The notes: a model not told the origin generated them from the letters alone. A DNA stretch of 64,000 nucleotides from Oikopleura dioica (GCA_907165135.1 OU015569.1:8742001-8806000); one strand, 5' to 3'. Shown: positions 230-23,418, counted from the first letter of the stretch. Made by a program: numbers and translations.

Positions 230-378
230 TTTTTTCTATATCAAAAAGAATTGAAAAATTTAAATTTCATTTTTGAGCAGCTGTTTTTTCCCATCGTTTA
301 TTTACGTGGAAGATCTTTTGGGTAAAATTTACAATTTTGCGTCGTATTTTTTTCAATTCTCATTTTTGATAAATTCCA

Positions 379-1976: not shown

Positions 1977-1998
1977 GCTCAGAGTCTGAGCCTCAGAC
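1977..1998. repeat. 22-bp overlapping double palindrome (X-n-X'-n-X), X=CTCAGA
   Basis: gCTCAGAgTCTGAGcCTCAGAc: two 7-1-7 palindromes with centres at 1984 and 1991. Confidence 0.9.
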
Positions 1999-2326
1999 GA
2001 ATACGATACCGATATTTAGCGTTTACAAGTAGCTTTCACGAAAATCCACAATTTTCCGCTAATATTGAGACATAAGATTGAGGAAGAACGGAAGGTCTAT
2101 GACGAGTCAAAGTTATAATTTTAACATTTAATTAGGTTGCGCTCTAAACAGCACTTACTTACATCACCAAAGTTCATCAATAAATAATAATGTGAAGCAA
2201 CGGTCCGCTGAATAGAAATAATAAGCAGTGATTGGCTTTATTGCAGAATCGTAAAAGTTAGATTTCGGTCTTAGAATAATCGAATCAGCTTCACTACGGC
2301 GACTTATATTAACGTTAGTCGTTTAC

Positions 2327-2348
2327 ACTCTCACTGAGAGTCTCTCAG
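2327..2348. repeat. 22-bp overlapping double palindrome, X=CTCTCA
   Basis: aCTCTCAcTGAGAGtCTCTCAg: centres at 2334 and 2341. Confidence 0.9.
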
Positions 2349-4865
2349 AGCGGCTCATTATGTTAGTCTATTTAATACGTATGCTAAGTTTCCTGGCGCG
2401 ACAACAGTTTTACAAATGAGGTGCCGTCTTTTTTGGCGATATAAACCAATATTAATCTCATCTTGCGACATCGGAATTGCGAACGTTATCAGAGGTCAAA
2501 ACTCCAAATCAGAGGGTCGGATCATCTCGGACCAAAGTCGGATGACGACTCTTTTCCGTTATCTTTAATTTCGATTAATTTTCGAGGAAAATGGCCGCAA
2601 TTTTTATCGACCTGAATCAATTATGATTGAAATAGTGATCTCCACACTCCCATAGAATCACTCGCCTGATCAGAATTGCTCGCTTTCTGAAAATTTTTTG
2701 GAAAATATCGTGGAAATTTGCTGTAGCTTGAAAGCTGCTAGTGAGAATATCTGTTTAGAAGAACAGTCAAAACTTCATGGGCCTAAAGATTACAAGCAGG
2801 ATCAATTATAAACTCATAAGGGAAGCTCGCGCTGCCTGGGCGTTAGGAGGTGGCGGTGGTGCGCGTTTACGGGCAGTGATTGAATCCGTCCTGACTGGTT
2901 TAGACCGTTGCGGGAAGCAGCACCTGAAACGAGTCAGCGAAGCCGAGCAAGATGTCGACTAACCCGATTTTTTTTTATTCTGCACAGCGGCCTAAGCCAC
3001 GGTTATCTTTGACAAGCGCTATCAAGGACAAAAGATAGCAGAAAGACTTCTTTTCTGAGCTTAATCTTATGATTGACAGCTTTCCACTCTTACAATCTCA
3101 TTAAATAGCTTTCTTTTTCGTCGTCAAAAATTATTATTAAAAATTTTTAATATAAAACTAAGATCAGTTTTTAAATTTTCTAGAAAGAGGAGGTTATTTG
3201 AGTCAGGTAACCCGTCAACGACGTTTGTTTTTGAAATAATAGCTAATGCTCATATCCAAAGGAACAAAAGACAAAATGATTGAAACCTAAATCTATTTTC
3301 AGATTTACAAATTCAAATCCTTCTCAACTGATAAGCAAGAACGCCGGAGACTAAGCATCGTATGTCCATGTAAAATCAGAGGCTGTCAATATAGAAAGAT
3401 CGATTGAATTTCTTTCGGCCGGTGCTATGAGCGTTTAAAATGGCTCTAGAACGAATTTGCTATTCGATTTTCGAAATTCAGAAAAAGTCTTTTCGCATTA
3501 TTCCGACCAGTTTACTACACTATCAATAATCATCTCATGTTCAATTGACCGCGTTCGATAATCCAAAAACTTTTCTAAAGGAAATAAAATGTGAAAAGTG
3601 GTGATGGATTTAGCTGTGTTTGTTACTTAGCCCATCATCGTCAAATATTTCATCCTCAGATTTTCAAATAAATACCGTGTCTAACTGCCAGGAATAATAT
3701 TTAAATTTCGGCATGAATTGAGTTTTCTGACCTGAACTTGGTTTCGAAATTAAGAATCTTGAATAACGGCAGTCGAAACTTCGGGAAACTCAGCAGATCT
3801 GATCGGTTCGTCATACGTTTTTATAGACCACTTTAAATTCTTAAGACGATTTATATTATTATTAGAGGCTAGGGGCTTTCATGACTTCTGCCCATAATAA
3901 ACTCATGTGATGTAAGGTGATTAAGAGCTGGGCGAGGTGGCTTTTTGCGTTCAAAAATCATAATTACATGACGAAAGCATTTTTAAGATTGGTTATTAGA
4001 AGAGTGTTTATTGCTGACCGCAGCAAGCCGGTCAAGGTTCTACTGTTTATTCATATAAGAGTTGCTGGTTTGGGACAAAAATAGCTTTGAAAATAAACGC
4101 ACGGCCGCTTGTTCTTGCTTCTGACTGCAGAAATGGCGAGGCTTGGTATTTTCGACCGCGGATACTACCCGCAGAAACATGCTTCAAATGTCTCGATTAT
4201 TCCAAGTTGAAACCATTTAACTTGAAACTCGAAAGAGAAGTCAAATCTCCAAATCAGACGCTTTGAGCGAAAGACAACAAAATTTCACAATCATTTATCT
4301 TCGTGCTGCGTATTTCAAACCGATCATAAGACAATATTGGGCGCGAACGATAAAAACGTCGCAATAAACTAATTCATTTTATTAATATGGGAAGAAAAGT
4401 GGAGATCATCAGACATTCGTTAAATAGTTTAATCTGTAATCGAAAGAAATAAAAACTTTAGAAGGCATGCTTTTAACCCGTTATTACATTAATTCGCATG
4501 ATTCTGTACATGAGCAGGAGAAGATGTCATTAAATCCCCCTAGCCACTAATAATAATATAAATTGTCATAACAATTTATAGTGGCCAATAAAAACGTATG
4601 ACGAGGTCATCAAATCTTCTGAGTTTCCGGAATTTGGAAATTATGTGTTGTTGGTACACATTTGAACTAATGATCGAGAGTGAAAAATATACTCTATATA
4701 ACTTATATACGATAATATCGGGAAGTCTAGAACCATAAAAATAACAGCAGGTCAGGAGTCGGGATATAGATGCGGTTAGCGGTCGGAAATGTATTATTTT
4801 TAGGGTCTGTTAAATGATCGGAAAGGGAAGCATCTAACTGCGCGAAAATACTCAGTTTTAGCAAC

Positions 4866-4887
4866 CGTATGAATCATACGGTATGAT
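4866..4887. repeat. 22-bp overlapping double palindrome, X=GTATGA
   Basis: cGTATGAaTCATACgGTATGAt: centres at 4873 and 4880. Confidence 0.9.
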
Positions 4888-5822
4888 ATCGTAAATAACG
4901 ATTATAGGCATGCTTCTGTTATTTCCGTGCAGTTTCTTCTAGGTCAAGCGAATAAGCGTTTTACGCGCATCTCAGATGAAGCCCCGATAAGATCCGACTG
5001 AACGATTTTATGCCAGTTCGAGCTTGACGTCTGAGAGAATACTGTAGCTTGTTTTGAAGGAAAGGCTGAGATATTATTACGGAAACTGTCTCGTAGAACT
5101 TGAATCTAATAAATATATTAAGATTGCCTTATCAAATACAGTCTACGATCGTTTATCTCGGAATTTAAATCTAGAATTTTCGGCAATCATTAAGACCAGC
5201 ATAACGCAAGAAAATTATTGGGGCTTTAGCTCCAACTTCGCGTAAAAACTCTGCGGCGCCCTCTTCATTATCAGCCGATTTTTCTGACCGGAGCAGACCA
5301 AAGCTCATTGCACTTGAAGGTATCCTGGTGGTAAGTCGAATATTTATTCTTTTGATTTTATGCACAGAGAAAGAGAAACCCGACTAGAATTAAGGAATCT
5401 TTTATAATGACGATAATAACGAGGCTTATTAGAGAACAGTTGTTTTGATGATAAACAATCGATTATTGAAGGCTACATGATTTTATACCATCGAGCTCCA
5501 AAAATGATCTAAAAGCTTTGAATAAATGGCTGGAAAAAAGATTTGAAGAAAAATCCTGAAGATTTAGTGTGGCTTAGCTCGTTAGTTTATCTCTTTATTT
5601 GCCATAATTACGAGATTTACTAGTTCTTTCTTGTTTTAGCAAGACTTTTTACGAAAAACGTAATTAGATTCGATCGGACACAGACTTTTATTTGTGTCCA
5701 AAAGTGTTAATGAAAGGGGAAGAGCAGTAAAATGATGAACATAAAAACTTTATCATCGTACGCGTCTTTTATTCGACGCAAAAACAAGCATCAGAGAAAG
5801 TAAAACCTAAGAATTGTTTTAG

Positions 5823-8800
5823 ATCCAATAATCAAGTGCAAGGATGCGTTCTGTCCTACTGGGTTTGATAACCCAGTTAAGGGCTAGTCCCACGGACGAT
5901 TTCTTCTTTTTTTCACAAGCTGCTCCTGGCGAGAAGTTTTGCTTCACTCCTCCAACGGATGATGAATTTGGTGAGAACAAGTTGCCAAAAATAAAAGCTC
6001 TATTAAATATTTAGCTATTTACAACCTCAAAAATATTGAAAACGACGATGTCGTCGCACTGATGGACTGTCAAGTAGTTTACAATCAGTTCATGGGCGAT
6101 AGGTACCTTCTTCCCAATTTTTACGTCGAAAACTTACATTCGTTTTTTAAGTCTTGAGCCTGCTCCACTGTCTGCTGCTAACAACCTCCCCAAAGCGGTC
6201 GAATGCAGTGTTCCCGATTCAGCAGAAGTGGGCGATATCTTCTCCCTCAGCTGGTCCGAGGAAGATGGCGAAGGGTTTTCTCACGACACAATTGAAGTGG
6301 TCGACCGAGAGGGTATTCTTCAGCTTCCAAGCGAGGAAGGGATCTCTTGCTGGCGACGAAAGAGCATTCGAAAGCAAGAACGTATTCGAGCCCTTGCTGC
6401 TGGTCGCTCTAATGGTGGCCGAGCAAGACGAGGCGCAAACCCGTCCATCGACTCTCTCGTTCCCCGTCAAGCTTCTCCTAATGGCGGTACCATCATCACT
6501 ATCGTCGGTCAAAACCTCAAATCAAAAATGATCGATATTGGAGGAGTCCAATCTGAGTCAGAAGATCAGGGAGAAACCTTTGAGATCTGGTTTGGACGAG
6601 ACTGGCACGATGGAAAGGGGGAGACTAAAATCCCATGCAGAATCGACAGAATGTTGGGGCTTCACTTGGAAAATATGTCAGGCGTCGACACTGTATCCTG
6701 TGTCGTGGATAAAATCCAGCGTCCAGGTCATTACTGGATCCGAATGATTATCGATAACAACGATAAAATCATTTATGGAACACACGTCTACTTCGCTGAG
6801 TCCGCCGCTCCATCTATCAGCCTTATGTATCCATCCGCTTCATCACCAGCAAAGCCTTCGGACGCCTACGATTACGAAGGTGTCTACTGGACAAGCTGGT
6901 ATGACGTTGATACCGACGAAGATGGTGTCCAGGATGAATCAATCAACAAGCACTGGGAGTCTAATGCTATGGAAATGCAATACTGCATCAATCCTCTTGG
7001 CATTGAAGCGATCAACAAGAGAACCGGACTTCCCTTTGTAAACTCCGCCAACGAAAATGCCGACGGAAACGCCATCGCAACCTACTTTAATACTCTCCAA
7101 GGTTTCAAATGTGAAGACGCGTCACAGACTGTCGACAGCATTACTTGCCCAGACGTAAAAATCAGATACAAATGTCTCCCAGGTCTTCGAGAGTTCAAAG
7201 GTCGAATCTACACTGATGTCCACGGTCGATCTGATCATCCAGAGTTCCATATTAACAGAATTATGGAGACTCCGAAAATTGTCAACGAAAATGACGGATT
7301 CAAAGCAACTGCTCAAATTTTCCTCAATGACGGACAGAACTGCGGTGATCATCCCAACTGTGGTGTGAACGAGCGCCTTCCAATGAAAGTAACCAATGGA
7401 GATAATGGTATTATCCGATACGTCGGTGATATCTCCATTCCTGGTGGATACAATTTCACATACCAAGTCTTCCACAATGGTTTCTCAATGACAAACAAGC
7501 GAAACTTGAACTACATGACCAATGAGGATCTCATTCCCGTCACTTACGAAGTTTACCCCCAGATCGACAGCATCAATCCACAAATGGGGTCGGTTGAAGG
7601 AGGAACTCTCATCACTATCACGGGATCTGGTTTTGTTGAAGATGGTCTCGGGGGCGATGTCAACGTCAAACTCGGAGATGATCTTTGCGAGATTGTTTCA
7701 ATGACTGAGCGAGAAATTATCTGTCGAACTGCTGCGAAGGCCGAAGAGCCAGTCACTTTCCCTGAGAATCGAGTTTTTACTCCTTTCTTTAATCTTGGAC
7801 ACTCGGATAATGGAATCATCAACAAGTGGGAAGGCGAGGCTTATGGGTTCACAGTCAAAAATAAGGCTCAATGCGAAGATCTCTGTCGAATCGATGCTTC
7901 CTGTATCATGTGGGTCTTCCACGATAGTAACTGCTATCACCACAACTTAGCCACTCAATCCGTTGATGCTTCTTACCATACAGATCATTATCAGATGGAC
8001 ACGTGGGACGGTGCTGAAGGTGGATACATCGCATGGACCGATCGAGTAAATGAGCAAGATTGCTTCTCCGGACGGGGCGAAAAATACGTCGGAAACGTCG
8101 CTGTGACCAAGCATGGGAATTCCTGTAAATCTGGCACATTCTGCCGAAATCCGGATCCACTTAACCAAGTGAAGCCTTATTGTGAGACTGATGATGGATC
8201 ACACGAGGCATGCAATATTCTCTACTGCTCGAATACACTTGGTAAATACGCGGGTAATCGTGGATCAGAGGTCAAAGTTCAAAAAGCGTACAGATGGCGA
8301 AGAGAACTCGATGCGCTTGACTATCCAGAAGCACGATACAGCGCTCCAGGATGGTCATGGACTAATGAAAACATGGCTTTCTCTTTCTACAAGTTTTACG
8401 GTGAATTCTTCGGAAACGCAGGTTCTGACTACCGGCTACGTGCTAAGAACTACTTCATTGCCCCCTTCGATGGTGTATTTTCATTCCATCTTCGAGGAGA
8501 TGACGCTCACGATCTATCTGTGGTCAATGATGACGGCTCTTTCGAAAGTATCGCAAGAAGCACATGGTGGGCATGTCACGTCGATGACGATTGCGAAACC
8601 CCGGCAGATTTCTCTCGACAGTTCACATTCGTCAAAGGCGACAAAATAAAACTTGTTGTCTCCTACACTGAAAACAGCGGGAACGATCACGCCACTGTCG
8701 GAGTTCACTACCACGGCAAAACTGCAGACTCCGGTACATGGCACGATACTGTTCCAAGAAATGAATGGCAGCAAGATAATTACGTCTACGATCGACAACA

Positions 8801-11800
8801 ACTGCGAGTTCGACAAACCGGAAAGAAAGACGGATTCTGGATTTTCTTCAATCACGCTCTCGGTGTTCAAGATGGAAGCGCGATTCCCGACGGAGAAACA
8901 TGGGACAGTTCTCGAGACCCAGAATTTAACATCAAGTGGTGCGGTGACAACAACAACTGCTTCGAAGCTGATATTGATGGAAAGGCAAGCAACTGGAAAG
9001 ATAATATGGAAGATACAATCAACTCATGGTTTGAACCAGAATGCTCAGTCTCAGGAAACATGAACCCTCTTCGATACTATGGTGGTTATGAAAACGATCA
9101 AAAATACGATTGGCCAGGACAACATCATTTTGTCAACTACCGAAATAGTATGTGCGGAAGAAAAGTTCATGAGACACACAATCATGACTTCTGGAACACA
9201 CATTTGGGTGGCAAATTCAACACTGACAATGAAAACGATGTTTGCTTTGCATACGAGGGTATCATCGACAAGTTCAGAGTTTACGGTGAATTTACCTACA
9301 CTAATGATGAAGGACAGACCAAGACATTCAAGGACTGGATGAGCCAACCAGTAAACTGGCAATCAAAAGGAACATACAAGCATATTTGCTTCAAGATCAC
9401 CGACACTATTGCACCCGGAAACTACTACGATGGGAATCCACTCACAAGTGGCATCACTGTCTACAATATGCGAGTTGAAAACGGCGATCTGTCAAACATT
9501 TACATTGATGAACTCCGAGTTGGAAAAATGCGAAGTCAAATCTCAGTTACCCAAACTAGAAAACCGCTTTCTTTCGGTGGCCAGGTTCCTACCAAAGTTG
9601 ACCTTGGATTCGCTTCAAATTACTGGTGGGGTCGATACATCCACATGGAGATCAAAACTTGGGCTGAAAACGCATTCTGCGGCACAAGCGCTCCTCTCCC
9701 ACAAATTCGTCCCATCGCGTCTAAAAGTGGAATCGTTAACGAAGGCCCAAATAATCCGACGTACGGTTCTAACTGGGAAAATGCTAATCCTGCTCTTGAA
9801 CTCAATCATTGGGGTGGTTTCGCCGAAGCTTTTACTTACGATGTTCAAAACAAGGACTTTTATATGATTGATCTTGACTACAAAAATATCCTCACGAATC
9901 CAGTGCAAAGATCAATGTTCCGCGTTTGGGTCTTCCGAAGAGACGAAATGCCGAGCAAGCTTGAAAATGTTCCCGTTGAAATCGGAATGGAAGGAAGCTC
10001 AGAAAAACTTAATGTCAACTTCGGTTATGATTACTGGCCAATGATGTTGAAGAATGATCTGATTGCTACCTGGCCTGAGCTAGGAGAAGACGGCTTACAT
10101 ATTGACACCTGGAGAAATGGTTGGTGTAACGAAGGCTATTACTATACCATAAGAACCAGACAACATGGTAACATGAAAGCTCTTACCTTTACGGCTAATC
10201 CGCCAGCTGGCTATTACATCCGACCAGATCATAAGCAAATGTGGGATCATCATTCTGCGGTTCCTACGGACATCATTCCAGGATCCGTCATCGCTACTCA
10301 TCACAAAGTTCCACAGGTTGTCGTCACTGCTAACGGACAAAGATCTGCTTGCAAAAACTGCGATTACCAATTTTTGAACAGATACACTCCAGTTCTAAAC
10401 TCAGTATCTCCTTCTTCTGGCGCTATTACTATGGGCGATTCGATCGTCTTCGAAGTGAATGTAAAGGACTACACTGGAGACTTGACTGAGTTCTCTGCTA
10501 CTGTTGGCGGAGTCGAAGTTGCTGACTGCTCTTTCACTGAAGCTGATAACGCAGGCGATCGAGTTCTTACTGTCTCTTGCAGTATTGGCGCAACCGGCGC
10601 AGGCTCCAACCACGAAATTGTCGTTCAATTTTTCGATTTGGGCGTTATGACTTCCTCGAGCACATTAACTGTGGCTACTGCTGTTACAAGCTCTTCTCCA
10701 TCAGAAGGATCCAGACACGGTGGCACCATTGTTACAGCTCAGGGAACTGGCTTCTATCAAGGACAAACAGTGCAGGTTAACTTCAACGGAGCTTCTGTCA
10801 ACTGCGATTCTACCGGTCTTGAAGTCACTTATACCGAAATGAAGTGTCGAACTGCAGCCAACGGTGGTTCTTCTGCTACAAGTCCTCAACTAGATAATGT
10901 GTCGCCTAATAAGCTTACTGTTCTTGGAGGCGAACGAATTACTCTTACCGGTTCTGATTTCACTTCTGAGTGTGACGATAGCGTTGTCTACATCGGCGAT
11001 GCTACTGCTAGGACTATTTCCTGGACTGACACTGAAATTATCGCGGTCGCCCCCGCGCAAGCCCATCAAGCTTCGCGAGCTGTCAGAGTCTACGTCTGCA
11101 ACATTGGAGAATCTAACAGTGTCAATGTTAACACTCGATTCCAGGTTACTGGCGTCAGCTCAACATTTTCGTCCCTCGCTGGTGGCAACATGATTACTGT
11201 CAGCGGACATGGATTTGCTTCTATGGCCGAGACTTCTGGAGATGGTTCGCTTTGGGCAGCTGTCGGAAACTACCCATGCAAAATCAGTGATGTCACTTAC
11301 AACAGCTTTGTCTGCAAAACTGCTCCATACAATAACCGCGTTGAGCTTCAAGTAACTGGTAGCGGTATTTACCGAAATGGCGTCAAAGTCGACATGGTCG
11401 AAATCGAAAAAGGAACAGAAGTGTTATGGAGATGGAGAATCGCCATCAGCGGTGTTGTTCCATATGTAAGACTGCAGCGAACTTCTGCGGCCGGTGATGC
11501 CGAGACTAGCAATGGACAATACTGGAGTCCTCAATTCCAAGGAGATGAAGGAAAATTCGTCAAATTTTTCACTGGAAAAGGAACCTATCATTATTCTACT
11601 GGGCTTATCGATTCTGCCACAATCTTCTCCAGCAGCACACTCAAGGTTGTTGATGCAACTGACAAACCACTTGAGTTTTCTGTTCAAATGAACGGTTTCC
11701 ACGCTGAAGTTGCTAATTTCAATACCAATCAGCCAAGCCATGCGTGTGAGAATGTTGGAACTTCTACTGCTATGCCACCAGCTGAAGCAGGACCTTGGAT

Positions 11801-14800
11801 AACTTATTCTTGGGCTACAACGCCAGTCGTAAATATCGAAAACGATATCGTTGCAAGCACTATCGGCGGCGATAACCGGGTGACCTTTTCTGCGAATGTG
11901 CCCGACATGAACAGCTGCAATAGCCGAGTTACTGCCTTCTACGGACCTTATTCTGGAAACTACAACTCTCATGGCTCGAACTGGTATAAATGGAACATCG
12001 ACCCAGCTGGAGCTTTAGACACCGCCGAGTCATACGAGCTCCGAGTTAACCTTCAGAACATTGGTGATGCCTACTACACCGACTACGTTGTTGAATCAGA
12101 TGAAAACGATGTTGTAACGAGCTATCAGGTTGACGGAAATACCGCCACAACTTTTGGTGCTCATGTTGATTCGATCAATTTGGACAGGTTCTCCCGTAAC
12201 GGTGATGTTGATCTCGTTATTAATGGCCAGGGCTTTGTCTCGTCTACTCGTGGTGATGATCAAATCAGCATCCGAGGCGACTTTACTGCCAACTGCAAGT
12301 CAACTTCACACAGCTACACCGAAGTTTCTTGCCGCCTTGACAAAATTGCTCAGAATACTGTCGATTATTCATTCACGATTTACGTTAATGAGTTCGATAC
12401 AGGATTCACCGTTCAGACTCGATCTGGTCAAACTCCTTCCGTCAACAGCGCGGATAGGTCAACTGTTTCCGCCGACTCCAATGTGATCACTTTCAATGGA
12501 GCAAATCTCGACGGCTTAACTGTCTACGCTGGTGATTTCGAGGCTGCCGTTTCCGCTAGCGGAAATACTGCAACTGCTACTTTCAATGGCGTTCAAGGTG
12601 GACGATATCCACTCCGATTCCATGCCACTACTGGAGGTGTCACCGTTGCTGATGGGCTCGATACAATTACAGTCGAATACTCCGCATCCGCGATCAGCCC
12701 TTCATCAGGTGGTCTTAATGGTGGTACTCTTGTCACCGTTACTGGCTTTGGTTTTGATAAAGACTCAGTCGTTGAAGTTTATGCTTCAAACGGTGAACGA
12801 CTTTGCGAATTCTGTCGAATCAAGGAAGTCGTCGATACAACAACTCTCGTTTTCTACTCGCCACGAGTAGTTTCTGCTGACACTGCTAAAGTAGTTATCA
12901 AGCATGAGTACTTGTCATCTGATACTGAATACTCTTTCGATTTTGTTTATTCTGCCAGCTCTGGTTCAATCGACAGTGCATCTGGAACAACATCTGCTCT
13001 TATCGGTGGCGAGACTATCACTCTCGCTGTTATCAACGAAGGATCTTGCGCGAATATGGCTATTGAAATCGTGCAGACTTCTAATCCCTGTGCTGTTGGA
13101 GCTCACGAATGTGCTGATTCTGCTACTTGTCATCCAACTGCTGATGGTCTCGATTACACATGTACTTGTGACGAATGCAGCTGGTGCGATGAATCTGACT
13201 ACTGGCATTACTACGGATCTGGCCGTGACTGCTTTAGATTTATTCGTCGAGGCCTGGCTTTCAAAGCTGACGCCGAAGCTGAATGCGAAGCTCAATATGG
13301 CGAAACCATGTATAGAATCGATTCTCAATATGACGAAGATAACCTGAAGGCTATTTACCAGACTGGAGGACCTGAAGGAAGCGACGGAACAGCTAGCCGA
13401 GGTACCTACGCGATGTGGTACGGTGAAGTGAAATGCTTCCGTGGTGAAATTGATGAAAACGGCGTTTTCGGATTCGTCTTCCCAGAAGGTGATTGCGATA
13501 GCTGGGGTAGTAGCGGCGATCAGTTCAAGAAGCGAGTCTGGTGTCGACGATACCATAACAGAAACTGTTTCAACAATGATCTTGATATGGGCCGATATAC
13601 TTACAAGGGCTGGCTTAGCAAATCTTTCACTGGAAAAGAGTGCTCAAGCTGGGAACCAACCTCGTGGTTCAGTGACTATGATCACAACCCTCATTATTTG
13701 AGAAAAGGAAATTTGTGTCGAAACTTATGGGATGATGATGATGGTATTTTCTGTGCTATGGATGAAAATTGGGATTGGAAAGACCCAGAACGATTCGCCA
13801 GAGAGAGCTGTGGTATTCCAACTTGCCAAGAGCTCGAAGCTGGAGCTAAGCGATTTGCTTGTGCTATTAGGCCATTCCTACCAGGATTGCCTGATGAATA
13901 CGTTTACATGTATTCGGATAGTCCCGATAATATAAGAAACGATACTTTCGTTCGAGACAAAAACTGCTACATTGGCGGAAGAAACGACAACCGACTTCAT
14001 AATCCCCACAGATGCTACTATGACAGTCGTTTCCCTGATCAATGGCGAATCAACACAGTCGCACCTGGTGTCCACACCGTCGAGTTTGTTCGACATGACG
14101 ATAGTTCAAAATATCTTGCGATAAATATGGCTGCCTCTTCTGATTCATACAGAGTTGTTCTCGTTTCAGACCCTAACGATCCAAATGCGCAGCTTAGCGT
14201 TGTCGATGATGTTTTTGCTCCTGGAACCGTTTCAATTCGACAGGGTGAATACTTCCTTCACTCCGGAAGAGGATCGGCCTGGATGAAACCAGTTCATCAA
14301 AATGAAATCGGTGACCTTGATGATGTCCAAGAACTTGCGTTTGTTCTCGAATGTCCTAACGACGATCTTGGAAATCTCATTGATCAACCGAAAGCTCCAT
14401 TTATGGTCAAAGAAACCCTTACTCCATCATGCTCCGCAGGTTCTGTTACTTTCGATGCTCCTTCTCTTCCAGCGGGTAGTTACAAAGCTGTTCTACGATC
14501 AAGCGAGTATGGCCAAGCAGAAAATGTCATTGATCTCGATTATGCACTCACTGTAGACTCTGCTTCACCAAGTACTATCGGTACAAATGGTGGTCAGTTG
14601 CTTACGTTGACTGGGTCTGGATTCAGCGAAATGGTCACAGGCGTTCTTTGCGAAGAGGACCTTACTTTTGTGAGCTTCACCGAAGCCACCGGTAGTGATG
14701 CTGAGGAAATAGTTTTTGCTGTCCCACCAATTAATCCTGACAACTGTGGAAGCGGTCTCGTACTTGAAGCCATTGACGGTTCTGATGGATCTGATATCTC

Positions 14801-17800
14801 TACTGACTCACGACGACGACGTAGACAAATCTTTGATGAAGGCATTACTGTTACAGAAGACGCAAATCCATCATTTACAATGGTTGAACCTAAGATCGGT
14901 GGAACTATGGGAGGCACTTCTTTGACAATTACTGGTTCCAATTTCGGCTCAACTCTTGAAGGCGTCACTGTCACTTTCTTTGAGGAAGTTGCCTGCGATG
15001 TTCAGTCTGTCACTGATACACAGATTATTTGCGTGACAAATCCCTTCCCCAAAGGAAAAGAACAAGTTCCTACTGCACCAGTCATCTTTATTCCCGGCGG
15101 AGCTGGTATTGCGACAGAATCTCCACTTGAGGAGAAGGATACTAAATTCTGGTACATGGATAGATGGTCTAGCCCATACACTTGGGGCTGTACCGATGAA
15201 TCTTGCAAACCTCAAGCTGGTGAAATCATTGTCGTTCCAGCTGGCCAGGTTCTTCTTCTTGATGAGACTACTCCTCTTCTTGCCGTTCTGGTTATTGATG
15301 GAGGTACTCTCATTTGGGACAGAAAAGACGGTATTGAGCTTCACATGCAGTATGGTGTTGTCAATAATGGAGGACACTTTGAAATTGGTAATGAAGATGA
15401 GCCTTTCTGCGAAGGAAACGCTCTTATCAAGCTTTACGGTCATCAACGTAGCATCAATCTTCCAATTTATGGTGCTAAAGTATTGGCAATCAGATTCGGT
15501 ACTATTTCAATCTTTGGCTGCCCTAAGACAACCACATGGACTGAACTGGCGAACACGGTTGAAGCTGGCGCAACAGAGATTACTCTCACTCACCCAATTA
15601 AGGATGATTGGTTTGTCGGAAATGAAATCGTCATTGCTGCGACTGGCGATCTCACTAACTTCCACCGATCCGAAAAGAGACAAATCGCTGCTGTTTCTGA
15701 TGATGGATACACTGTTACTCTTGCAGAAGCTCTCGAACATCGACATATTGCTGTATGCACTAATGGCCCTGATGACAACGGCCTTGGATGGGGATGGGCT
15801 GGAGAGATATGCACTCGCGCGGAGGTTGGTCTTCTGACAAGAAATGTGAAGATGATGGGTAATATAAATAACGAATGGACTGAAGAGCTTCCCGAATGCA
15901 AGCTTGGTCCCGGAACAGCTTTTGGTACCCAAACTTGCTTCCAAAACAGATATGGCCACGAAACAGGTTCCGACCAATTTGGATCAGTTCTTTTCCTCCA
16001 CAAGCCAGCATATGCTCATATTGCCTACTTTGAAGTGACTCACGCTGGTCAGGCTTTCAATCTCGCTCGATACCCAATCCATTTCCACACTCCTGGATCT
16101 ATGCCTACTTCATACGTGCGAGGTTGTGCTATTCACAACACTTTCAACCGAGCCCTCACTCTCCATGGTATCCACGATATCGTTGTTGAGCATAATGTCA
16201 TTTTCAACGTTATGGGTCTTGCTTTCTTCCTCGAAGATGCTGTCGAAGAAAATAATATCCTTAGATACAACTTGGGTATCATGAACAAAAAGTCATCCTC
16301 ACTCTTGAACGTCGATTCTACTCCATCCGTTTTCTGGATCACGAACCCGAACAATATTTTCTACGGTAACCGTGTTGCTGGCAGCTCCCACTTTGGTTAC
16401 TGGTTTAATCCGCCAGAGGATGGACCAACTGGGCCTTCCTCTAAGGATCCACAATATGATTGGGTTTGCCCCAAGAACCGACCACTCGGACAGTTCTACA
16501 ATAACACCGCTCACTCTCTTGGTAAATATGGTATGTGGATCTTCGTTGATCTTACTCCAACACAAAGTGGTGAGTGCGGAGATGGAATTCCGAAAGCGAA
16601 TAAGTTCGGATGGAAGCCTGAAATTGACGTCGAAGGAAACCCAGTTCCCGAGGATACGTTTGGCTTCTTTGCCTGGCATTGTGAGCGTGGTGCTGAAATC
16701 GCTACTGGAGGCGCACTGCAGTTCCATAACATGATTGTCGCGAATAACTGGATTGCCGGTCTTGCCGGTAAAGAGTCCTTCCTCCACACATATGCTGATG
16801 GAGAAAATGATGACCAAGCTCAGCTCTTTAAGCATAATATCGTTATTGGTCACTTGTCCGGCGATCCTGAGTTGGACGCGTGTGGAGACATGGGTATTGA
16901 AACTCCATGGAAATTCTTTTCATTTACCGTTGACGATATCCATTTCTTCAACTTTGATGAACCAACACCAGACCTTTCTTCTGTCGGTGATCCTTCAAAC
17001 TTCGGAATGGCTTCTGAACTTGCCATTCGACGATGTGTTGCCTTCGATCCTTGCTACGGCTCAAACGCGTTCGATTGTGGTGCCATTACTTGGTTCCGAA
17101 ACACTAAGTGGTACAATTCTCAACGTAGATCAACCTTTGCTTGGGAAGGAGAAGCCGGTGTTCTTGATTTGGACGGTACCTTTGCAGGTGGTTCTCCTGG
17201 TGATTACGTTATCGCTGCGTCTGATGCCTTCGATCCAGCATTGTGCACTTTGGATACATCCGGAAAGTACGACAATGCTAACACTGATCCAAGCTGGGAC
17301 GAGCGTTCGCATCCGGCTATGAGATGCAAGGGATCTTTGGGAGAGAAAAAATTCAAGCCGCATCGATTCATGTTCAACAATGCTAAACCTGACTCGATGG
17401 AAGGAACGATGGCTGTTTTCACTAACCAGTACGGAACAACCAAGTCTGGCTTCAGAAACTGTCGACCTCGAGGTAAAGGTTGGATGGTTATGCTTCAAGG
17501 AAACGAAGAATACGAAATGCACTTCGAGCAACACGAGCATATTTCCAACATCTCGTTCACTGGAGATATTGACGATTTCGAACAAGGAGAATGGCTTACT
17601 ATCCGTCATGACTTCCCAGAACTCATCGATTTTGCTGAAATGATCGGGGCTTCTGATGCTGAACCCGAAAAAATTGATGAATGGCCAGAAGATCCTCTTA
17701 CTCTCAACGCATACGACTACAACGTTCAGAACGAGTCTGCTCCATTCACAGTTCGATACACATTTAACGGTCAGGCTAATACTGAGAATCCTCAAGTCCA

Positions 17801-20800
17801 AGAAGGTGCCTTCACTTGGGGTGAGAATTTCTACGTCCAGCCCTCTTTCCACAAATGCTTCTTCAAAGATTGCATTCCACCACCACCAGCTCCACCAACT
17901 TTGGTAAGTTTTAATAAGTTTTACCTGACATTCACTTATTCCGCCAATTAAGCCTCCAGCACTTGTTGATTGCGCTTTCCTCGACTGCTTGGGTGGCGAA
18001 CTTCCAGCTGAGTTTAATGATGTTCATATTGCTGCAGGACAAAGAGCCATTATTGATGCAGCTGCAATCTCTGCTGCTAACGGTCACTTTAAATTTGCCT
18101 CAGTCTTCGTTGACGGTACTCTCGAGCTTCCAGGATCTTCTCTTGAAGCTGGATCTACTTGCTTAATTGAAGCTGATCACCTTGTTGTCAACACTGGCCA
18201 GGGTGAGAATAAAGAAAACCTCAGTAGCCGAAGACGACGAGACGTTGTTCACATTGCTAATGGCAATATCGTCATTGGTACTGCTGACGATCCGATCCCA
18301 TGCGGAACAAAGGTCATCCTGAAGATCAACGGGGACGAGTATTCGCCATCCTTCGGCGCTATGCCTGGATCAGTTCCAATTGGTGCTAAGGCCCTAGGTG
18401 GTATCGGTGGTATTGAAATGCATGGTTGCGAGTTGACTCACACCTGGACCACACTTACGAATACTGTCAATGCTGGTGATAGCGAGATCACTGTCGACGA
18501 CGACGTCAGTTCTGAATGGAAGGTTGGCGACGAGCTTGCTATTGCAACTTCTGACTACGAGCAAAGACATACTGAGTACGTTTCTATCACTGCCATCAGC
18601 GGACAGACACTTACTTTGAATACAACTTTCTCCTGGACTCATTTGGGTTCTGCTGACTCTACTATAACCGCTCTTGGACGAACAGTAAGCCAAGCCGCTG
18701 AAGTTGCTTTGTTGACCAGAAACATTGTTGTCGACGGTTCAGGCGGCGCTGATGGAAAGATGGGAGGTCGAATTTTGGTGAGCAACTACATGGAAACTAA
18801 TGGCGTCCATACCTACTACAGAAATGGCTATGGTCAGTTCAGTTTTGTCGAGTTCAAAGCTATGGGTCAATACGGCTACTCCGAATATGATGATCTTCGA
18901 GCTGGTATCCTTTTCTATAATGTTGATGGTGATGGCGATGCTGACTCAGGATTGAAGAATTCCTATGTCAAGGGATGTGCCTTCCACGCTGGTTTCCACT
19001 CCGCTATCGCTGTTATGTTTGAATCTAACAACATTGAGGTCTCCAACAACGTCATCTTTGGAACTGTTGACTCTGCTATCGTCACAGACTCAAGTGGAGT
19101 AACCATCGATGGAAACGTCATTGGTAACGTTTTCCACCAACAGCTCTATCAAAATTATTTCGAAACGACTGTCAACGCCAATTTCGCTGATGACAAAACG
19201 CCTTCTGGTATTGAGACGATGGGTACTACGGATGTTCTCATCACAAATAACAGAGTCTCTGGTGTTGATGGTTCATGCTTTGGCGGTAATGGCGAGCTTT
19301 GCAACGAACTTGAAGCTAACTCTGGTGATCATGTTGCTGGATCCTGGACTGGAAACCATGGTAAAGGTTGCGTACGTGGATACTACGTCCTATGGGGTGG
19401 TCACAGCGCCTGTACTAAGATTTCGGGTTTCACTTTCCACAAAACTCTTTTCTATGGTGTTACGGCTCAAACGTCTTCTGCTCATCTAGTTATTGACGAT
19501 GTTATCATCCAAGATGCACCAGTTGGTATCTACGCTATCATGACTGGACCTGACGCAACTATGCACTCTGCTATGAACAAGGATGTTACCATCAAGAACT
19601 CTTACATTGTTGGACGATCCGATAGCTATGATTGTACTTATGATACTGACGTGAAGGCTAATGTTTACTCTGCCTCGCCAATGGCCCGGCAGTCTTCTCT
19701 TGTTCAAGTGAAGACAACTCACACTGCTCTCCAGCCTACTGATTTCATCATCAAGAAAAATGGATTCCCTGCTTGCGAGTGGTGGGCTAACGAAATCGAG
19801 CCCGCTCTGTACGGTAACACTCTGATTTACAATACAGAGTTCGTCAATTTCCAGGGCAAATGTGGCGATAAAGACTCTCTCTCCATTTCCAACAAGAAAA
19901 TGAGCGATCACGTTTTCCCAATCACTTATGTTAGTGGAAACGTTAAGACCAATGTTAACGACGATTATATCGCAGTTAACCGAAGACCACAAGTGAAGAC
20001 AGTTAATATTGCCGACTGCGTCGATCTGTTCTGTGACGGCTACAAGTTTAACACGATCGTTGATAAAGAAGGCTCTATTCTTGGATCTGCTGGAACGCTG
20101 ATTGCTGAGTCTGAGTTCGAATGGAATGGATTTACTCGAGTCCAACCGGATGGATCGTCTCTCACATACGTCCAAACACAGGATGGTCTTGGTGACTATC
20201 GAATCCCGAATCCTATGATGACTCGCATGGATGGCTCAAAGATCCCTATTAATGAAGTTAGAACAGACGTCGGTGCGGTTCGCAATGGAAACTGCGTCTG
20301 GAAAAAGGGATTCCCCGGCTGGTTCTGTCCCGATATTGAGTACCAAGACTTGATTTTCGAATCTATGGACGAAGACCACATGCGACGACGACTTTCACCT
20401 GTTGCTATTCGATCCGAAGGTTATGTCACCATTGCTAATGGTCCAGGAGATCACTCTTGCTGCATTGGTTACGCTTGTTTTGTTCGATTGTCAACTTTCC
20501 ATTTGCCAGCAGCATGTGGAAAGGACTTTGAAGTCTATCTTTCATCGACTACTCCTATGAATGCCCGATGGCATTTGCCCAATGCTCCAGAAGACTGCAA
20601 GATCAAGGTTTCGTTCTATACAAAGCGACCTAACCGAATCGACATCAAACAAGATGGTGCATACATGGTTCCAACTAATGGCGCTGTCCAGGATGACGGC
20701 TCCATCGCTTGGCAGAAGCCTGATCTGATTGAACATATGGTCGGAGTTGATTCTCACCAGCCTGGTGCTAACTTCCAGGAGCAAAACAACCAAATGTTCC

Positions 20801-23418
20801 ATGTCATCATTGGCGGTGGTAAAGTTTACGACATGATAACGGTTCAAACGCTTGTTCTCGAACTTGGCATGATGACTGAGTTGAGTGATGATGACTTCTA
20901 TGATAACGGAAATCTCGCCAACAATCTCGCTGCTCTTCTCGGCATTGATCCATCCAAGATTAAGGTGATGAATGTCATTTCTGAAGATTCTCGAAGAAGA
21001 CGTAAGAGACGAGAAGAAGCTGGATTCCTTGGATTCTCTCTCGCTGGATTCCGTTTCCGACGTGAAGCTGCCGAGTCAACTCTTCAGATTGAAATTTCAC
21101 CTGAAGAGACTGAAAGTGGTGCTGCCAAGCTTTCTGATCTTGCCGAAGAAGTCGTTGCAAAGGCTGCAGACGTCGCTGCTGCAGGTAAATTCACACAACT
21201 AACATAACATTGTTCAATCTGTAATTTTAAATTTTGATTAAATTATTTTATTTATTGAAGAGAATTAAAATTTATATCTTAGTTGCTGATGCTACTGGCG
21301 CAGAAGTCGAAGCCGAAATCGCTGTCGCGCGACCTCCTCCTCAACCAGGCTAGGGTCTTAATTTAGGCACAATATTGAATATTTCTCACGGCACGTTTTT
21401 TTCCGAACGTTACAGCGCTGACGTGGGTTTGACGGAAAAATGTGTTCGATGTTTGCAAAAAATAGACCCCTGAACTAGCAACACCACCTCCAGCTGTTCC
21501 ACTTACTGAACTTCTTGGTATGAGAGAAATCACACCCGAAGATGACGTAGAAGAATTCCTCAAGGAGGTCGAGGAAACTCTTGGATCACCACTTTCGGAG
21601 CTCAAGACTGCTGAAGAGACTGCTAATGAGGCACAAGAACTTGTTGATGCTGCCAACGAGCCCATCATCTACGATACACCAACACGAATGGAATTCTCTC
21701 ACCAACCTTCTGGACCTCAAATTCTCAATCAGAAGTTCTTCGACGTATTCCAGATCATTATGTACGATCAAAATGACCAAGTGATGACAACTGTTGGTTT
21801 TGTTGACAATCCGGTGAAACTGAAGGCTGAAATCGTCGATCCAGTCCTTACCGGACCTAATGTCGCATCCCCCGATGGTACTACTCGAGTTGAATTCACT
21901 CCTGGTTCCGGTATCGCCACTTTTGATAATTTGATTATCACTGGCGACGTTACATCCGCCAAGATCAAATACTCCATTGCTTCTCCAGCAGATTACGTTG
22001 GCACTGTCGATGCAATCATTTCTGAGGTCATCACTTTCATTCCACCACAGCCTGAAGGCGAGTGCGTTGCCGATGAAGGAAATCCATTCGACAAAAAGGA
22101 ATCGTGGACTGAAACTTGCGACTTTGTCTGTCTTTCACCTTGCTCTGATCTTTCTAGCGTTGGCGGTGGCGTCGGTGGACCCGAATGCGCGGATGTCGCT
22201 AACTGCGAAGGAACTGGGGATATGCCAACTTACTCTACTTGCGACGCGGATGTCGGATGCAAGTGCAACATGACTTTAGTTCCAGCACAAACTGAAATCA
22301 ACCCTGAAGACTTTGTCTACGCTGAGTGCAACTCTGGCTCCCTTGAAGTTCGCATCAACAAGTGTGTCATGAATCGATTCGGTTTCACTCTCAGCGATCT
22401 TTACATTGCTGGTCCAGAAAAAACTGATGATTTCTCCACTCTGGCTACTTCATCGTCCAACAACTGCCGCGGTAAGATCGGATATCAAAACGGTGCTGAA
22501 TACGTCTTCTCGATCGATCGAAACTTCGGCGACTGTGGAACCGTGATTGAGGCTAATGGCACTCACAACACTTACAGTAATGCTATTCAAGGATCAGCTG
22601 GTATCGATAATGGAGTCATTAAACGAATGGTAATGAAATGAGCCTAAAACTGATACATAAATTATATTTAGCGAAACCTCTTTACGAGCTTCACATGCGT
22701 CTACGAGATCGATATTTCCGTCTCAATCGGTATCGGTGCAGTTCAAGCTACTTCATTGGAGATCGCTCTCGGTGAAAATACGGGAACATTCGATGTTACA
22801 ATGGCACCATACACTGATTCGTCGTACTCTGTGGTTTCAAGCGAGACTGACACTGTAACCATTCCAGAGGATGTCTTTATCGGCCTTGCCCTTACAGATG
22901 CCGGTTCTGAATTTGTTACTTACGCTAAAGATTGTTGGGTGACTGCTACAAACGACCCCGATGATACTGACATGTTTGACTTGATCATTGATGGATGTGT
23001 CAACCCTGACGTAAGATTAAGCTAATTTTAATTTATCTAACAATATTTCACAGGATCCGGATAACATCGCAGTGATTGAAAACGGTGCATCCTCTCAATC
23101 TCGTTTCTCCTTTGCTGCCTTCCAATTTGTCGGACTCGAAGCGAACGAGCTCTACGCTCACTGTGCCGTCCAGATCTGCTCGCCAGACAACATGAGTGAT
23201 TGCACACCATCTTGCGGAAGTCGACGCAGACGGTAAGCTAATCTTTAAAAGTTAAGTTGATCATTTCTTGCTTCAGATCTGCTCGAGAACGACGAGACAC
23301 TGGTGATATCATCACAACAAGCATCCAGGTGTCCGCCGTCCAATGCGAGCGCGACTGTCCTGCCGATGATCTGATCTGCCGACAACCATGCGTTCAGACT
23401 ACCATATACAGAGGATAA
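5823..23418 (+). CDS. PKHD1L1: Giant fibrocystin-L (PKHD1L1)-like protein with CysD, PAN, kringle x2, PA14, IPT/TIG, EGF, CTL-like, G8 x2, beta-helix and a C-terminal ZP module; 5' exon(s) not located
   Basis: Exons 5823-5882, 5920-5970, 6015-6102, 6152-17903, 17953-21184, 21283-21348, 21479-22629, 22672-23010, 23054-23232 and 23277-23418 join in frame (5,686 codons including the stop, plus a missing N-terminus). IPT motifs (PQIDSINPQMGSVEGGTLITITGSGF), G8 (RWSSPYTWG..GQVLLLDETTPLLAVLVIDGGTLIWD), beta-helix motifs typical of PKHD1L1 (GQAFNLARYPIHFH, GCAIHNTFNRALTLHG), ZP-N/ZP-C cysteine pattern. The symbol denotes homology; orthology is untested. Confidence 0.95.
6884..7175 (+). other. Mucin CysD (WxxW) domain within the giant protein
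   Basis: YWTSWYDVDTD..D..E....C.NPLGIEA...TGLPF....GFKC....Q....CPDVKIRYKC matches the WxxW/CysD pattern of MUC2/MUC5AC/CILP. Confidence 0.8.
22321..23300 (+). other. Zona pellucida (ZP-N + ZP-C) module followed by a consensus furin cleavage site
   Basis: AECNSGSLEVRINKC...C.G....FSIDRNFGDCGTV...FTCVY (ZP-N); GTFDVTMAPYTDSSY..DCWVT..DLIIDGC..SRFSFAAFQF..LYAHCAVQIC..CTPSC (ZP-C); then GSRRRRSARERR. No hydrophobic TM segment before the stop. Confidence 0.9.

What the first reader, a model, noticed from the sequence alone, without database searches (positions are those of the whole stretch)
5823..23418. Giant fibrocystin-L ectodomain fused to a C-terminal ZP polymerisation module with no membrane anchor
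Seen: >5,680 aa with IPT/TIG, PA14, G8-beta-helix x2, then ZP-N/ZP-C, a furin site (SRRRRSARERR), a short beta-strand resembling the external hydrophobic patch (DIITTSIQV) and a 4-Cys tail, with no TM helix. Established: PKHD1/PKHD1L1 are single-pass membrane proteins without ZP domains; ZP modules polymerise into filaments after convertase cleavage (uromodulin, tectorins, egg-coat ZPs). Inference: a secreted filament-forming protein displaying ~5,000 aa of adhesive or glycan-binding modules, i.e. a possible structural fibre of the larvacean filter house. It may correspond to a catalogued oikosin, but this architecture is not one I know as a characterised family.
Basis: partly seen in the sequence, partly recalled or inferred. 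Interest (0 to 1): 0.9.

Follow-up and report, generated by a model that had tools for sequence, protein, structure and literature searches.

The report
Giant fibrocystin-L protein with ZP tail
A larvacean (Oikopleura) gene encodes a 5,691-residue secreted protein in which the membrane anchor of fibrocystin-L is replaced by a uromodulin-type filament-forming ZP module; the fusion is real, transcribed as one mRNA and conserved in related marine genomes, but what it builds is still untested.

Summary
Window 5844-23418 (+) is one intact nine-exon gene with 42-130 nt introns, encoding 5,691 aa. Pfam finds TIG repeats, a mucin WxxW domain, two G8 + beta-helix units, then ZP-N and ZP-C. The tail has a polybasic site, an EHP-like strand and four Cys, with no TM or GPI-type hydrophobic end. 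PA14 is only weakly supported.

The fusion is not a gene-model artefact. An orthologue (85% identical end to end) sits on an intron-less 17.5-kb contig as one uninterrupted ORF, and all eight predicted splice junctions match it without gaps. Five unlabelled marine metagenome contigs show the same layout, one with G8 and ZP-N in a single ORF.

The ZP module is closest to uromodulin by sequence and predicted fold. It replaces exactly the stalk, TM and tail of fibrocystin-L, after the conserved convertase site of the MAD-like domain. All ZP-bearing relatives form one clade.

It is not oikosin 14 or 20 by primer tests; oik14 is a paralogue. Published work notes eight O. dioica fibrocystin homologues but not the ZP fusion.

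Polymerisation and a house role are inferred only. Verdict: a new variant of a known kind.

The parts
5844..5970 (+). Exon 1: start codon and a short N-terminal hydrophobic stretch (MRSVLLGLITQL...), the presumed signal peptide
   Evidence: The N-terminus is collinear with orthologue P0001. The signal peptide is inferred from the sequence; no predictor was run.
6015..6102 (+). Exon 2 (88 nt), missed in my first model and recovered from the orthologous transcript
   Evidence: The junctions match P0001 without gaps.
6152..17903 (+). Exon 3 (11,752 nt): TIG/IPT repeats, Mucin2 WxxW (about 6888-7175), weak PAN, Kringle and PA14-like stretches, first G8 (about 15195-15551) and CEMIP-type beta-helix (about 15981-16535)
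   Evidence: Pfam.
17953..21184 (+). Exon 4: second G8 (about 17995-18459) and right-handed beta-helix (about 18913-19254), then a MAD-like region
   Evidence: Pfam; alignment to fibrocystin-L.
20992..21012 (+). Polybasic site RRRRKRR (aa 5003-5009), homologous to the conserved predicted convertase site of fibrocystin-L (mouse R3986 in the MAD-like domain)
   Evidence: Conserved in three O. dioica-complex orthologues, in L002, L003 and L006, and in frog, newt, fish, shark, amphioxus and mollusc fibrocystin-L. The site in mouse is described in PMC11527881.
21283..21348 (+). Exon 5: 66-nt in-frame mini-exon (Ala/Pro-rich linker) with a GC donor
   Evidence: Its 22 residues are present in the orthologous transcript.
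21479..22629 (+). Exon 6: acidic linker, last Ig-like domain shared with fibrocystin-L relatives, Cys-rich EGF-like cap, and ZP-N (about 22327-22605)
   Evidence: Pfam ZP-N, E 6.4e-9. The uromodulin alignment extends N-terminal of ZP-N.
22672..23010 (+). Exon 7: first part of ZP-C (Pfam match about 22780-23004)
   Evidence: Pfam ZP-C, E 7.4e-13.
23054..23232 (+). Exon 8: second part of ZP-C (about 23057-23206) and the polybasic cleavage site RRRR (from 23222; its last codon is split by intron 8)
   Evidence: Pfam ZP-C, E 1.2e-10. The intron sits at the same place in L004 and L006.
23277..23418 (+). Exon 9: second basic motif RERR (23284-23295), EHP-like strand DIITTSIQVSAV (23305-23340), 4-Cys tail C-x3-C-x6-C-x3-C (23344-23391), stop codon at 23416-23418
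   Evidence: A strand is predicted at this place in the AlphaFold model of the orthologue. EHP-like strands occur in all related loci.

Best explanation
Shown. This is a single, intact, expressed gene of an Oikopleura (larvacean) genome encoding a 5,691-aa secreted protein. Its first roughly 5,000 residues are a fibrocystin-L (PKHD1L1) ectodomain with a few added modules (WxxW, and weak PAN- and Kringle-like stretches). Its last roughly 400 residues are a uromodulin-type ZP module: an EGF-like cap, ZP-N, ZP-C, a polybasic cleavage site, an EHP-like strand, and a short 4-Cys end. This module stands exactly where fibrocystin-L has its stalk, transmembrane helix and cytoplasmic tail. The fusion arose in a clade of larvacean-type fibrocystin-L genes and is kept in all members whose C-terminus could be read.

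Inferred, by analogy with uromodulin and other ZP proteins. In the secretory pathway the EHP strand blocks the ZP-C groove. A furin-type convertase cuts at RRRR and removes the EHP and the 4-Cys end. The ZP-N and ZP-C halves then join head to tail into a filament from whose core the huge fibrocystin-L part projects as a side arm. Having no anchor, the precursor can leave the cell before it assembles, which would suit an extracellular structure built away from the membrane, such as the house rudiment.

A second, ancestral convertase site in the MAD-like domain (aa 5003-5009) may cut arm from core. Whether the two pieces then stay together, as in SEA-type domains, is unknown.
For: One gene.
- All exons are in frame with no internal stop.
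- Orthologue P0001 (85.3% identical over 5,687 aligned residues) lies on the 17,469-nt JGI contig L001 as one uninterrupted ORF, 30-17117.
- Four more cluster members of 5,692-5,694 aa sit on contigs of 17.3-17.5 kb from JGI and Logan assemblies.
- All eight predicted junctions match P0001 without a gap.
- In L002, G8, beta-helix, linker, ZP-N and the start of ZP-C share one ORF.

Conservation.
- The same order of parts occurs in L003, L004, L006 and L007.
- All ZP-bearing proteins fall in one clade with 99% SH-aLRT support.

ZP type.
- phmmer against PDB sequences gives uromodulin at E 4.5e-26 and GP2 at 2.3e-20.
- The AlphaFold model of the orthologue's module (mean pLDDT 76) has the uromodulin polymerisation region 4WRN as best Foldseek match, E 2.7e-20, followed by uromodulin and egg-coat filaments.
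- A strand is predicted at the EHP position.
- The cysteine columns that are invariant or 90% or more conserved in the 41-sequence alignment are numbered on the orthologue P0001, and the window's module has the same count and spacing of cysteines.

Replacement of the anchor.
- Homology to fibrocystin-L runs to about aa 5088, across the conserved polybasic site.
- Of the seven fibrocystin-L tails printed, three end in a hydrophobic stretch consistent with a TM helix (P0011, P0038, P0027) and one has a shorter hydrophobic end (P0120); the other three are not informative.
- This protein and all its orthologues end hydrophilic.

Family context. Oik14 is a house protein described as fibrocystin-like and probably without a TM (PMC3390340). 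Four of eight O. dioica fibrocystin homologues are expressed in the house-making epithelium (bioRxiv 10.64898/2026.03.31.715263).
Against: - No experiment or expression datum for this gene was found.
- The house role rests on paralogues.
- Two related loci (L002, L003) keep the EHP-like strand but have no polybasic site before it, so furin activation is not universal in the family.
- The conserved convertase site at aa 5003-5009 could separate the large part from the ZP part.
- The predicted signal peptide is short and weakly hydrophobic.
- The structure was predicted for the orthologue's module, not the window's own spliced protein, and pTM is only 0.50.
- Whether the EHP strand docks into ZP-C in the model could not be inspected.
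Confidence: 0.6

Rival explanations
1. The protein is cut at the ancestral convertase site (aa 5003-5009) and the two products part. The roughly 5,000-aa fibrocystin-L piece then acts as a soluble or coat glycoprotein. Only the roughly 640-aa C-terminal piece (rest of the MAD-like domain, linker, Ig-like domain, EGF-like cap, ZP) forms filaments. The gene would thus work as a two-product precursor rather than a filament with giant arms.
For: The polybasic site is conserved from molluscs to vertebrates and in the larvacean relatives. It is the highest-scoring predicted cleavage site of PKHD1L1, whose ectodomain is reported to be shed (PMC11527881). Further conserved polybasic motifs lie at aa 2959 and 4082.
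Against: Cleaved SEA/MAD-type domains usually stay associated (general knowledge; also raised in PMC11527881). Keeping both parts in one reading frame in every lineage examined argues that linkage matters at least during secretion. No cleavage data exist.
Confidence: 0.2
2. The ZP module does not homopolymerise. It either co-assembles with other ZP proteins of the animal (for example oikosin 20) or serves as a non-polymerising binding domain, as in endoglin and betaglycan.
For: L002 and L003 lack the polybasic activation site. Another ZP protein, oik20, is made by the same giant Fol cells that make the paralogue oik14 (PMC3390340). Egg-coat ZP proteins form heteropolymers (PDB 8BQU, listed).
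Against: The nearest relatives by sequence and fold are homopolymerising uromodulin and GP2, far ahead of betaglycan (E 7e-3) and endoglin. An EHP-like strand, the hallmark of regulated polymerisation, is kept in every lineage.
Confidence: 0.15
3. It is not a house component but an apical matrix or sensory-cell coat protein. This would continue the role of PKHD1L1 as a surface coat (for example on ciliated mechanoreceptor cells or the epithelial surface), with the ZP module anchoring it in that matrix.
For: PKHD1L1 is a stereocilia coat protein (PMC6707252, listed). Only four of eight O. dioica fibrocystin homologues are enriched in the house-making epithelium, and the authors read even those as epithelial ECM rather than house parts. 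The house proteome paper lists only one fibrocystin-like oikosin, and it is not this gene.
Against: The paralogue oik14 was found in the house proteome. Complete 17-kb transcripts were assembled at least five times from environmental and public runs, which suggests high expression; this is an inference.
Confidence: 0.25
4. The ZP exons belong to a separate downstream gene, and the fusion is an artefact of reading through short gaps.
For: A gap of 294 nt separates 21184 from 21479, and the mini-exon in it uses a non-canonical GC donor.
Against: The intron-less orthologous contig has one ORF across this point, and the mini-exon's residues are present in it. L002 has both parts in one genomic ORF. 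The ZP exon has no signal peptide of its own.
Confidence: 0.02

Closest known systems
Fibrocystin-L (PKHD1L1)
   Same: - Collinear homology from about aa 1450 to 5088, including the TIG repeats, both G8 + beta-helix units and the MAD-like region. The largest block is 32% identical over about 2,300 residues to frog fibrocystin-L; the G8 region is 44-46% identical to many animals.
- The conserved polybasic site of the MAD-like domain is kept.
   Different: - No stalk, TM helix or cytoplasmic tail; a ZP module stands in their place.
- About 1,400 extra residues, with a WxxW domain and weak PAN- and Kringle-like stretches.
- None of the 118 non-larvacean relatives listed has a ZP domain.
Uromodulin / GP2 (ZP-module filament proteins)
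   Same: - Best sequence and fold match of the last roughly 400 residues.
- The order of parts is the same: EGF-like cap, ZP-N, ZP-C, cleavage site, EHP strand.
- The conserved cysteine columns of the 41-sequence alignment are numbered on the orthologue P0001; the window's module has the same count and spacing of cysteines.
   Different: - Uromodulin and GP2 are GPI-anchored and are cut by hepsin at a non-furin site. Here there is no anchor signal and a classic polybasic site.
- The N-terminal 'arm' is about 5,300 aa instead of about 300.
Oikosin 14 (Oikopleura house protein, HE663411)
   Same: Described as fibrocystin-like with IPT/TIG domains, probably without a TM, made by giant Fol cells and found in the house (PMC3390340). 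Its forward in situ primer aligns, with 6-8 mismatches, to the homologous place in this gene and its orthologue.
   Different: The primer encodes ELCFASK, whereas this gene and the Bergen reference protein CBY37138.1 have DVCFAYE at that place, so oik14 is a paralogue. No ZP domain is mentioned for it in the paper. Its sequence could not be fetched.
Alpha-tectorin, DMBT1-like and other large proteins ending in a ZP module
   Same: A large multidomain extracellular part followed by a C-terminal uromodulin-like ZP module. Such proteins (NIDO-VWD-C8-TIL-ZP, SRCR-ZP, D8C-ZP) are among the best hits of this ZP module in the 1.8-billion-protein library.
   Different: The N-terminal part here is of a different family (TIG/G8/beta-helix). 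Tectorin is GPI-anchored.
Teleost liver-made egg-coat ZP proteins (choriogenins) and Drosophila Dumpy (from my own knowledge)
   Same: Choriogenins are, to my knowledge, ZP proteins secreted without a TM that assemble far from the producing cell. Dumpy is a giant ZP protein forming load-bearing fibres.
   Different: Choriogenins are small. Dumpy has a TM and EGF/DPY repeats. Neither has fibrocystin domains. These comparisons were not tested here, apart from choriogenin H appearing as a weaker match.

Membership tests
Fibrocystin-L (PKHD1L1) | Many IPT/TIG domains in the N-terminal two thirds | tested here: met
   Pfam TIG, E 1.6e-72 with 9 stretches in exon 3; at least 10 stretches in the orthologue.
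Fibrocystin-L (PKHD1L1) | PA14 domain near the N-terminus | tested here: inconclusive
   Only a sub-threshold hit in the orthologue (E 0.031, 14.5 bits against a cut-off of 24). No hit at E <= 0.01 in the window.
Fibrocystin-L (PKHD1L1) | Two G8 domains, each followed by a parallel beta-helix (TMEM2/CEMIP-like) | tested here: met
   G8 at 3.3e-26 with CEMIP_beta-hel at 2.5e-49; second G8 at 2.9e-7 with Beta_helix at 4.6e-7.
Fibrocystin-L (PKHD1L1) | MAD-like membrane-adjacent region with a conserved polybasic cleavage site | tested here: met
   Aligned polybasic motif in seven fibrocystin-L proteins and in this protein. The site is described in PMC11527881.
Fibrocystin-L (PKHD1L1) | Single C-terminal transmembrane helix and short cytoplasmic tail | tested here: not met
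   No 19-residue window above Kyte-Doolittle 1.56, and a hydrophilic end. The same holds in all orthologues and relatives read. Three of the seven fibrocystin-L tails printed do show a C-terminal hydrophobic stretch.
ZP-module proteins of the polymerising (uromodulin) type | ZP-N and ZP-C domains in that order, with the conserved cysteines | tested here: met
   Pfam ZP-N and ZP-C; conserved Cys columns in the 41-sequence alignment, numbered on orthologue P0001; matching cysteine count and spacing in the window's module; fold match to 4WRN at E 2.7e-20.
ZP-module proteins of the polymerising (uromodulin) type | Cleavage site just after ZP-C, followed by an external hydrophobic patch strand | tested here: met
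   RRRR at aa 5642-5645, then DIITTSIQVSAV. A strand is predicted there in the orthologue's model. Conserved in P0001, L004 and L006; L002 and L003 keep the strand but lack the basic site.
ZP-module proteins of the polymerising (uromodulin) type | Membrane tether (TM or GPI signal) after the EHP | tested here: not met
   The tail after the EHP is 25 hydrophilic residues with four Cys. To my knowledge this feature is also absent from some accepted family members (teleost liver ZP proteins), so it is typical rather than strictly defining.
ZP-module proteins of the polymerising (uromodulin) type | Forms filaments after cleavage | not testable with these tools
   Needs recombinant protein and EM.
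Oikosins (house proteins of Oikopleura) | Detected in the house by proteomics and expressed in the oikoplastic epithelium | not testable with these tools
   No gene-level data were found. Primer tests say it is neither oik14 nor oik20. Paralogues are expressed in the Fol and Eisen fields.

The most novel reading that the evidence does not exclude
Larvaceans turned a membrane-bound coat protein (fibrocystin-L) into a family of anchorless, self-assembling ZP filaments with 5,000-residue glycan- or fibre-binding arms. These filaments would be load-bearing or mesh-forming elements of the house filters. The anchorless propeptide with its 4-Cys knot would be a new way of keeping a ZP module silent until it has left the cell.
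Probability: 0.25. Interest if true: 0.8.

Novelty: new variant of a known kind. Interest (0 to 1): 0.55.

Why it matters
How the larvacean house, a complex filter rebuilt several times a day, is assembled outside the cell from secreted parts is largely unknown at the molecular level. Published work treats the Oikopleura fibrocystin homologues as fibrocystin-like proteins of unclear role and does not mention a ZP module. A uromodulin-type polymerisation module at their end gives a concrete, testable assembly mechanism: cleavage-triggered filament formation. For the ZP field it offers a natural case of a very large cargo on an anchorless ZP module, and a dated domain swap (TM replaced by ZP) within one clade.

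Tried and rejected
1. My first gene model joined 5970 directly to 6103 and gave 5,678 aa. It was replaced after the orthologue showed an extra 88-nt exon and a different acceptor.

2. Identity with oikosin 14 or 20 was tested with the published in situ primers. The best matches have 5-9 mismatches in the window and in all fetched loci. The 5-mismatch hit at 57516 (-) lies in an electron-transfer-flavoprotein gene and is chance. The 6-mismatch hit at 9236 is at the homologous place but encodes different residues. The idea that oik14 and oik20 are two halves of one paralogous G8-ZP gene could not be tested, because neither sequence could be fetched.

The contig was obtained by a metagenome scan instead.

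4. A search for long proteins sharing the C-terminal 600 residues found only the orthologue cluster. A search with the partial reference protein CBY37138.1 found one distant hit and no oikosin.

5. Earlier notes of this scan, searched by words, gave nothing.

6. No paper in the library holds both 'G8 domain' and 'zona pellucida'. The only paper linking Oikopleura with ZP domains in the house is PMC3390340.

7. The separate-gene reading of the ZP exons was rejected.

Full report
**What is in the window**

The region stands out by composition, at about 45-46% G+C against about 37% upstream. It contains one enormous open frame (6078-17948) followed by further open stretches on the + strand.

Joining them at canonical splice sites gives an intact coding sequence. 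A first model had 5,678 aa. After comparison with an orthologue, the final model has nine exons and encodes 5,691 aa: 5844-5970, 6015-6102, 6152-17903, 17953-21184, 21283-21348, 21479-22629, 22672-23010, 23054-23232 and 23277-23418. The introns measure 42-130 nt, and one has a GC donor.

Pfam finds, in order:
- IPT/TIG repeats (E 1.6e-72)
- a Mucin2 WxxW domain
- weak PAN-, Kringle- and PA14-like stretches
- G8 plus a CEMIP-type beta-helix
- a second G8 plus beta-helix
- ZP-N
- ZP-C, split over two exons

After ZP-C come RRRR and RERR, a beta-strand-like DIITTSIQVSAV, and a C-x3-C-x6-C-x3-C end. No stretch reaches transmembrane hydrophobicity, and the C-terminus is hydrophilic.

**Is the fusion real?**

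A search with the G8 region returned P0001, a 5,692-aa protein with the same Pfam content including ZP-N and ZP-C. Its cluster includes CBY37138.1, a partial Oikopleura dioica protein. It also includes four more members of 5,692-5,694 aa on contigs of only 17.3-17.5 kb, from JGI and Logan assemblies.

The JGI contig (L001, 17,469 nt) carries one uninterrupted ORF from 30 to 17117. It has no introns, so it behaves as an assembled transcript. The window protein is 85.3% identical to P0001 over 5,687 aligned residues. All eight predicted splice junctions, including both sides of the 66-nt mini-exon, match the contiguous orthologue without a gap.

Independently, a genomic metagenome contig (L002) has G8, beta-helix, linker, ZP-N and the first part of ZP-C in a single ORF, with the rest of ZP-C in following exons. 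No splicing assumption is needed there. The ZP exon of the window has no signal peptide of its own.

**Conservation**

Four more unlabelled marine metagenome contigs, some from Tara Oceans, show the same order of parts on one strand with short gaps: L003, L004, L006 and L007. Identity to the window protein in the G8 region ranges from 57% to 82%. Their giant exons and tiny introns suggest other appendicularians, but that is an inference.

In a tree of the TIG-G8-beta-helix region, all proteins with a demonstrated ZP end fall in one clade with 99% SH-aLRT support. Every member of that clade whose downstream sequence I could read has a ZP module. The next branches out are P0053 and P0015. P0015 ends in a Pro/Thr-rich linker and leucine-rich repeats instead. 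Beyond them lie ordinary fibrocystin-L proteins.

None of the 118 non-larvacean relatives listed has a ZP domain in its precomputed Pfam list. A search for long proteins sharing the C-terminal 600 residues found only the orthologue cluster.

**What the ZP module is like**

Against all PDB sequences the best matches are uromodulin (E 4.5e-26) and GP2 (E 2.3e-20). Choriogenin H, ZP2 and betaglycan follow far behind. The uromodulin alignment starts before ZP-N, so the Cys-rich stretch in front behaves like uromodulin's EGF IV cap.

In the 1.8-billion-protein library there are 1,187 relatives. The long ones I checked are tectorin-like, SRCR-ZP and D8C-ZP proteins, and one is a further G8...ZP-N fragment.

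An AlphaFold model of the orthologue's module, built on a 41-sequence alignment, has mean pLDDT 76 and predicts a strand at the EHP position. Its best Foldseek matches are the uromodulin polymerisation region (4WRN, E 2.7e-20), uromodulin filaments and egg-coat filaments.

Among relatives, the polybasic site plus EHP is kept in P0001, L004 and L006, with the intron at the same spot. L002 and L003 keep the EHP-like strand but have no basic site. None has a TM. A small Cys-rich end occurs in four of the six tails read.

**Where the swap happened**

Homology to fibrocystin-L runs to about aa 5088. Just before that, the motif RRRRKRR (aa 5003-5009) aligns with a polybasic motif in frog, newt, fish, shark, amphioxus and mollusc fibrocystin-L and in L002, L003 and L006.

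By its distance from the C-terminus, this motif appears to correspond to the conserved predicted convertase site of PKHD1L1 (mouse R3986, in the MAD-like domain) described in PMC11527881. That correspondence is an inference, because no mouse sequence was aligned here.

Downstream, fibrocystin-L has a last Ig-like domain, a Pro/Thr-rich stalk, a TM helix and a short tail (from published descriptions; one search printed only the last 140 residues). Of the seven tails printed, three end in a hydrophobic stretch consistent with a TM helix, one has a shorter hydrophobic end, and three are not informative. Here the Ig-like domain is kept and is followed by the EGF-like cap and the ZP module. So the ZP module replaces precisely the stalk, anchor and tail.

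Whether the two stay together is open.

**Relation to known oikosins**

The house proteome paper (PMC3390340) describes oik14 as fibrocystin-like, with IPT, G8 and PbH1 domains, probably without a TM, and made by giant Fol cells. It describes oik20 as a ZP-domain protein from the same cells.

Using its in situ primers, neither pair matches the window, the orthologous transcript or any related locus. The best matches have 5-9 mismatches. The oik14 forward primer does align to the homologous place (aa about 1100). However, it encodes ELCFASK, where this gene, its orthologues and the Bergen reference protein all have DVCFAYE. Oik14 is therefore a paralogue.

A 2026 preprint reports eight fibrocystin homologues in O. 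dioica. Four are enriched in the house-making epithelium, in the Fol and Eisen fields. It does not mention ZP domains. No paper in the library combines 'G8 domain' with 'zona pellucida'.

**Mechanism, and what is inferred**

Shown: the architecture, its expression as one mRNA in a sister lineage, its conservation, its uromodulin-like fold prediction, and the absence of an anchor.

Inferred from the uromodulin and ZP literature (PMC7737619, PMC7486124 and PMC4755741, listed): the EHP keeps the precursor inactive; cleavage at the basic site releases it; ZP-N and ZP-C of neighbouring molecules then form a filament core from which the N-terminal part projects.

The lack of an anchor would let the precursor diffuse before assembly, which fits a structure built off the cell surface. 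That this structure is the house is plausible from the paralogues but unproven for this gene.

**Verdict**

This is a real and well-conserved lineage-specific domain fusion. As far as the searchable literature goes it is not described. I class it as a new variant of known kinds (fibrocystin-L and ZP-module filament proteins), with a clear and testable mechanism but no functional data.

Noticed in passing
window 21349-21478: Intron 5 has a GC donor (GC-AG) and is the longest intron of the gene at 130 nt. The 66-nt exon before it is confirmed by the orthologous transcript.
   Followed up: partly
window about 14890-14910 (aa 2959) and about 18229-18240 (aa 4082): Two further polybasic motifs (RRRRR and RRRR) are conserved in the O. 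dioica-complex orthologues and in L002, L003 and L006. They bear on the scan's separate 'polyprotein' note. Their cleavage is untested.
   Followed up: partly
L005 13800-14900: A related giant protein (P0015: WxxW, TIG, two G8 units) ends in a Pro/Thr-rich linker and leucine-rich repeats instead of a ZP module. This is a second, different replacement of the fibrocystin-L anchor.
   Followed up: partly
L002 19590-19780 and L003 22660-23030: These two relatives keep the EHP-like strand but have no polybasic site in front of it. L002 ends right after the strand.
   Followed up: no
proteins P0176 (3,056 aa) and P0174 (1,214 aa): These are proteins with ten and four tandem ZP-N/ZP-C modules respectively (P0176 also has a D8C domain). 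Their origin is unknown. Tandem arrays of whole ZP modules are unusual.
   Followed up: no
window 57491-58012 (-) and 61169-62971 (-): Neighbouring genes: an electron-transfer flavoprotein domain gene, and an LRR + gelsolin (flightless-like) gene. The best window match of the oik14 forward primer (5 mismatches, at 57516) falls in the former by chance.
   Followed up: partly
window 5844-23418 versus P0001, P0129, P0134 and CBY37138.1: The window protein is only about 85% identical to three mutually 93-94% identical orthologues. Those are about 91% identical to the Bergen reference fragment. The window therefore seems to come from a distinct lineage of the O. dioica species complex.
   Followed up: no
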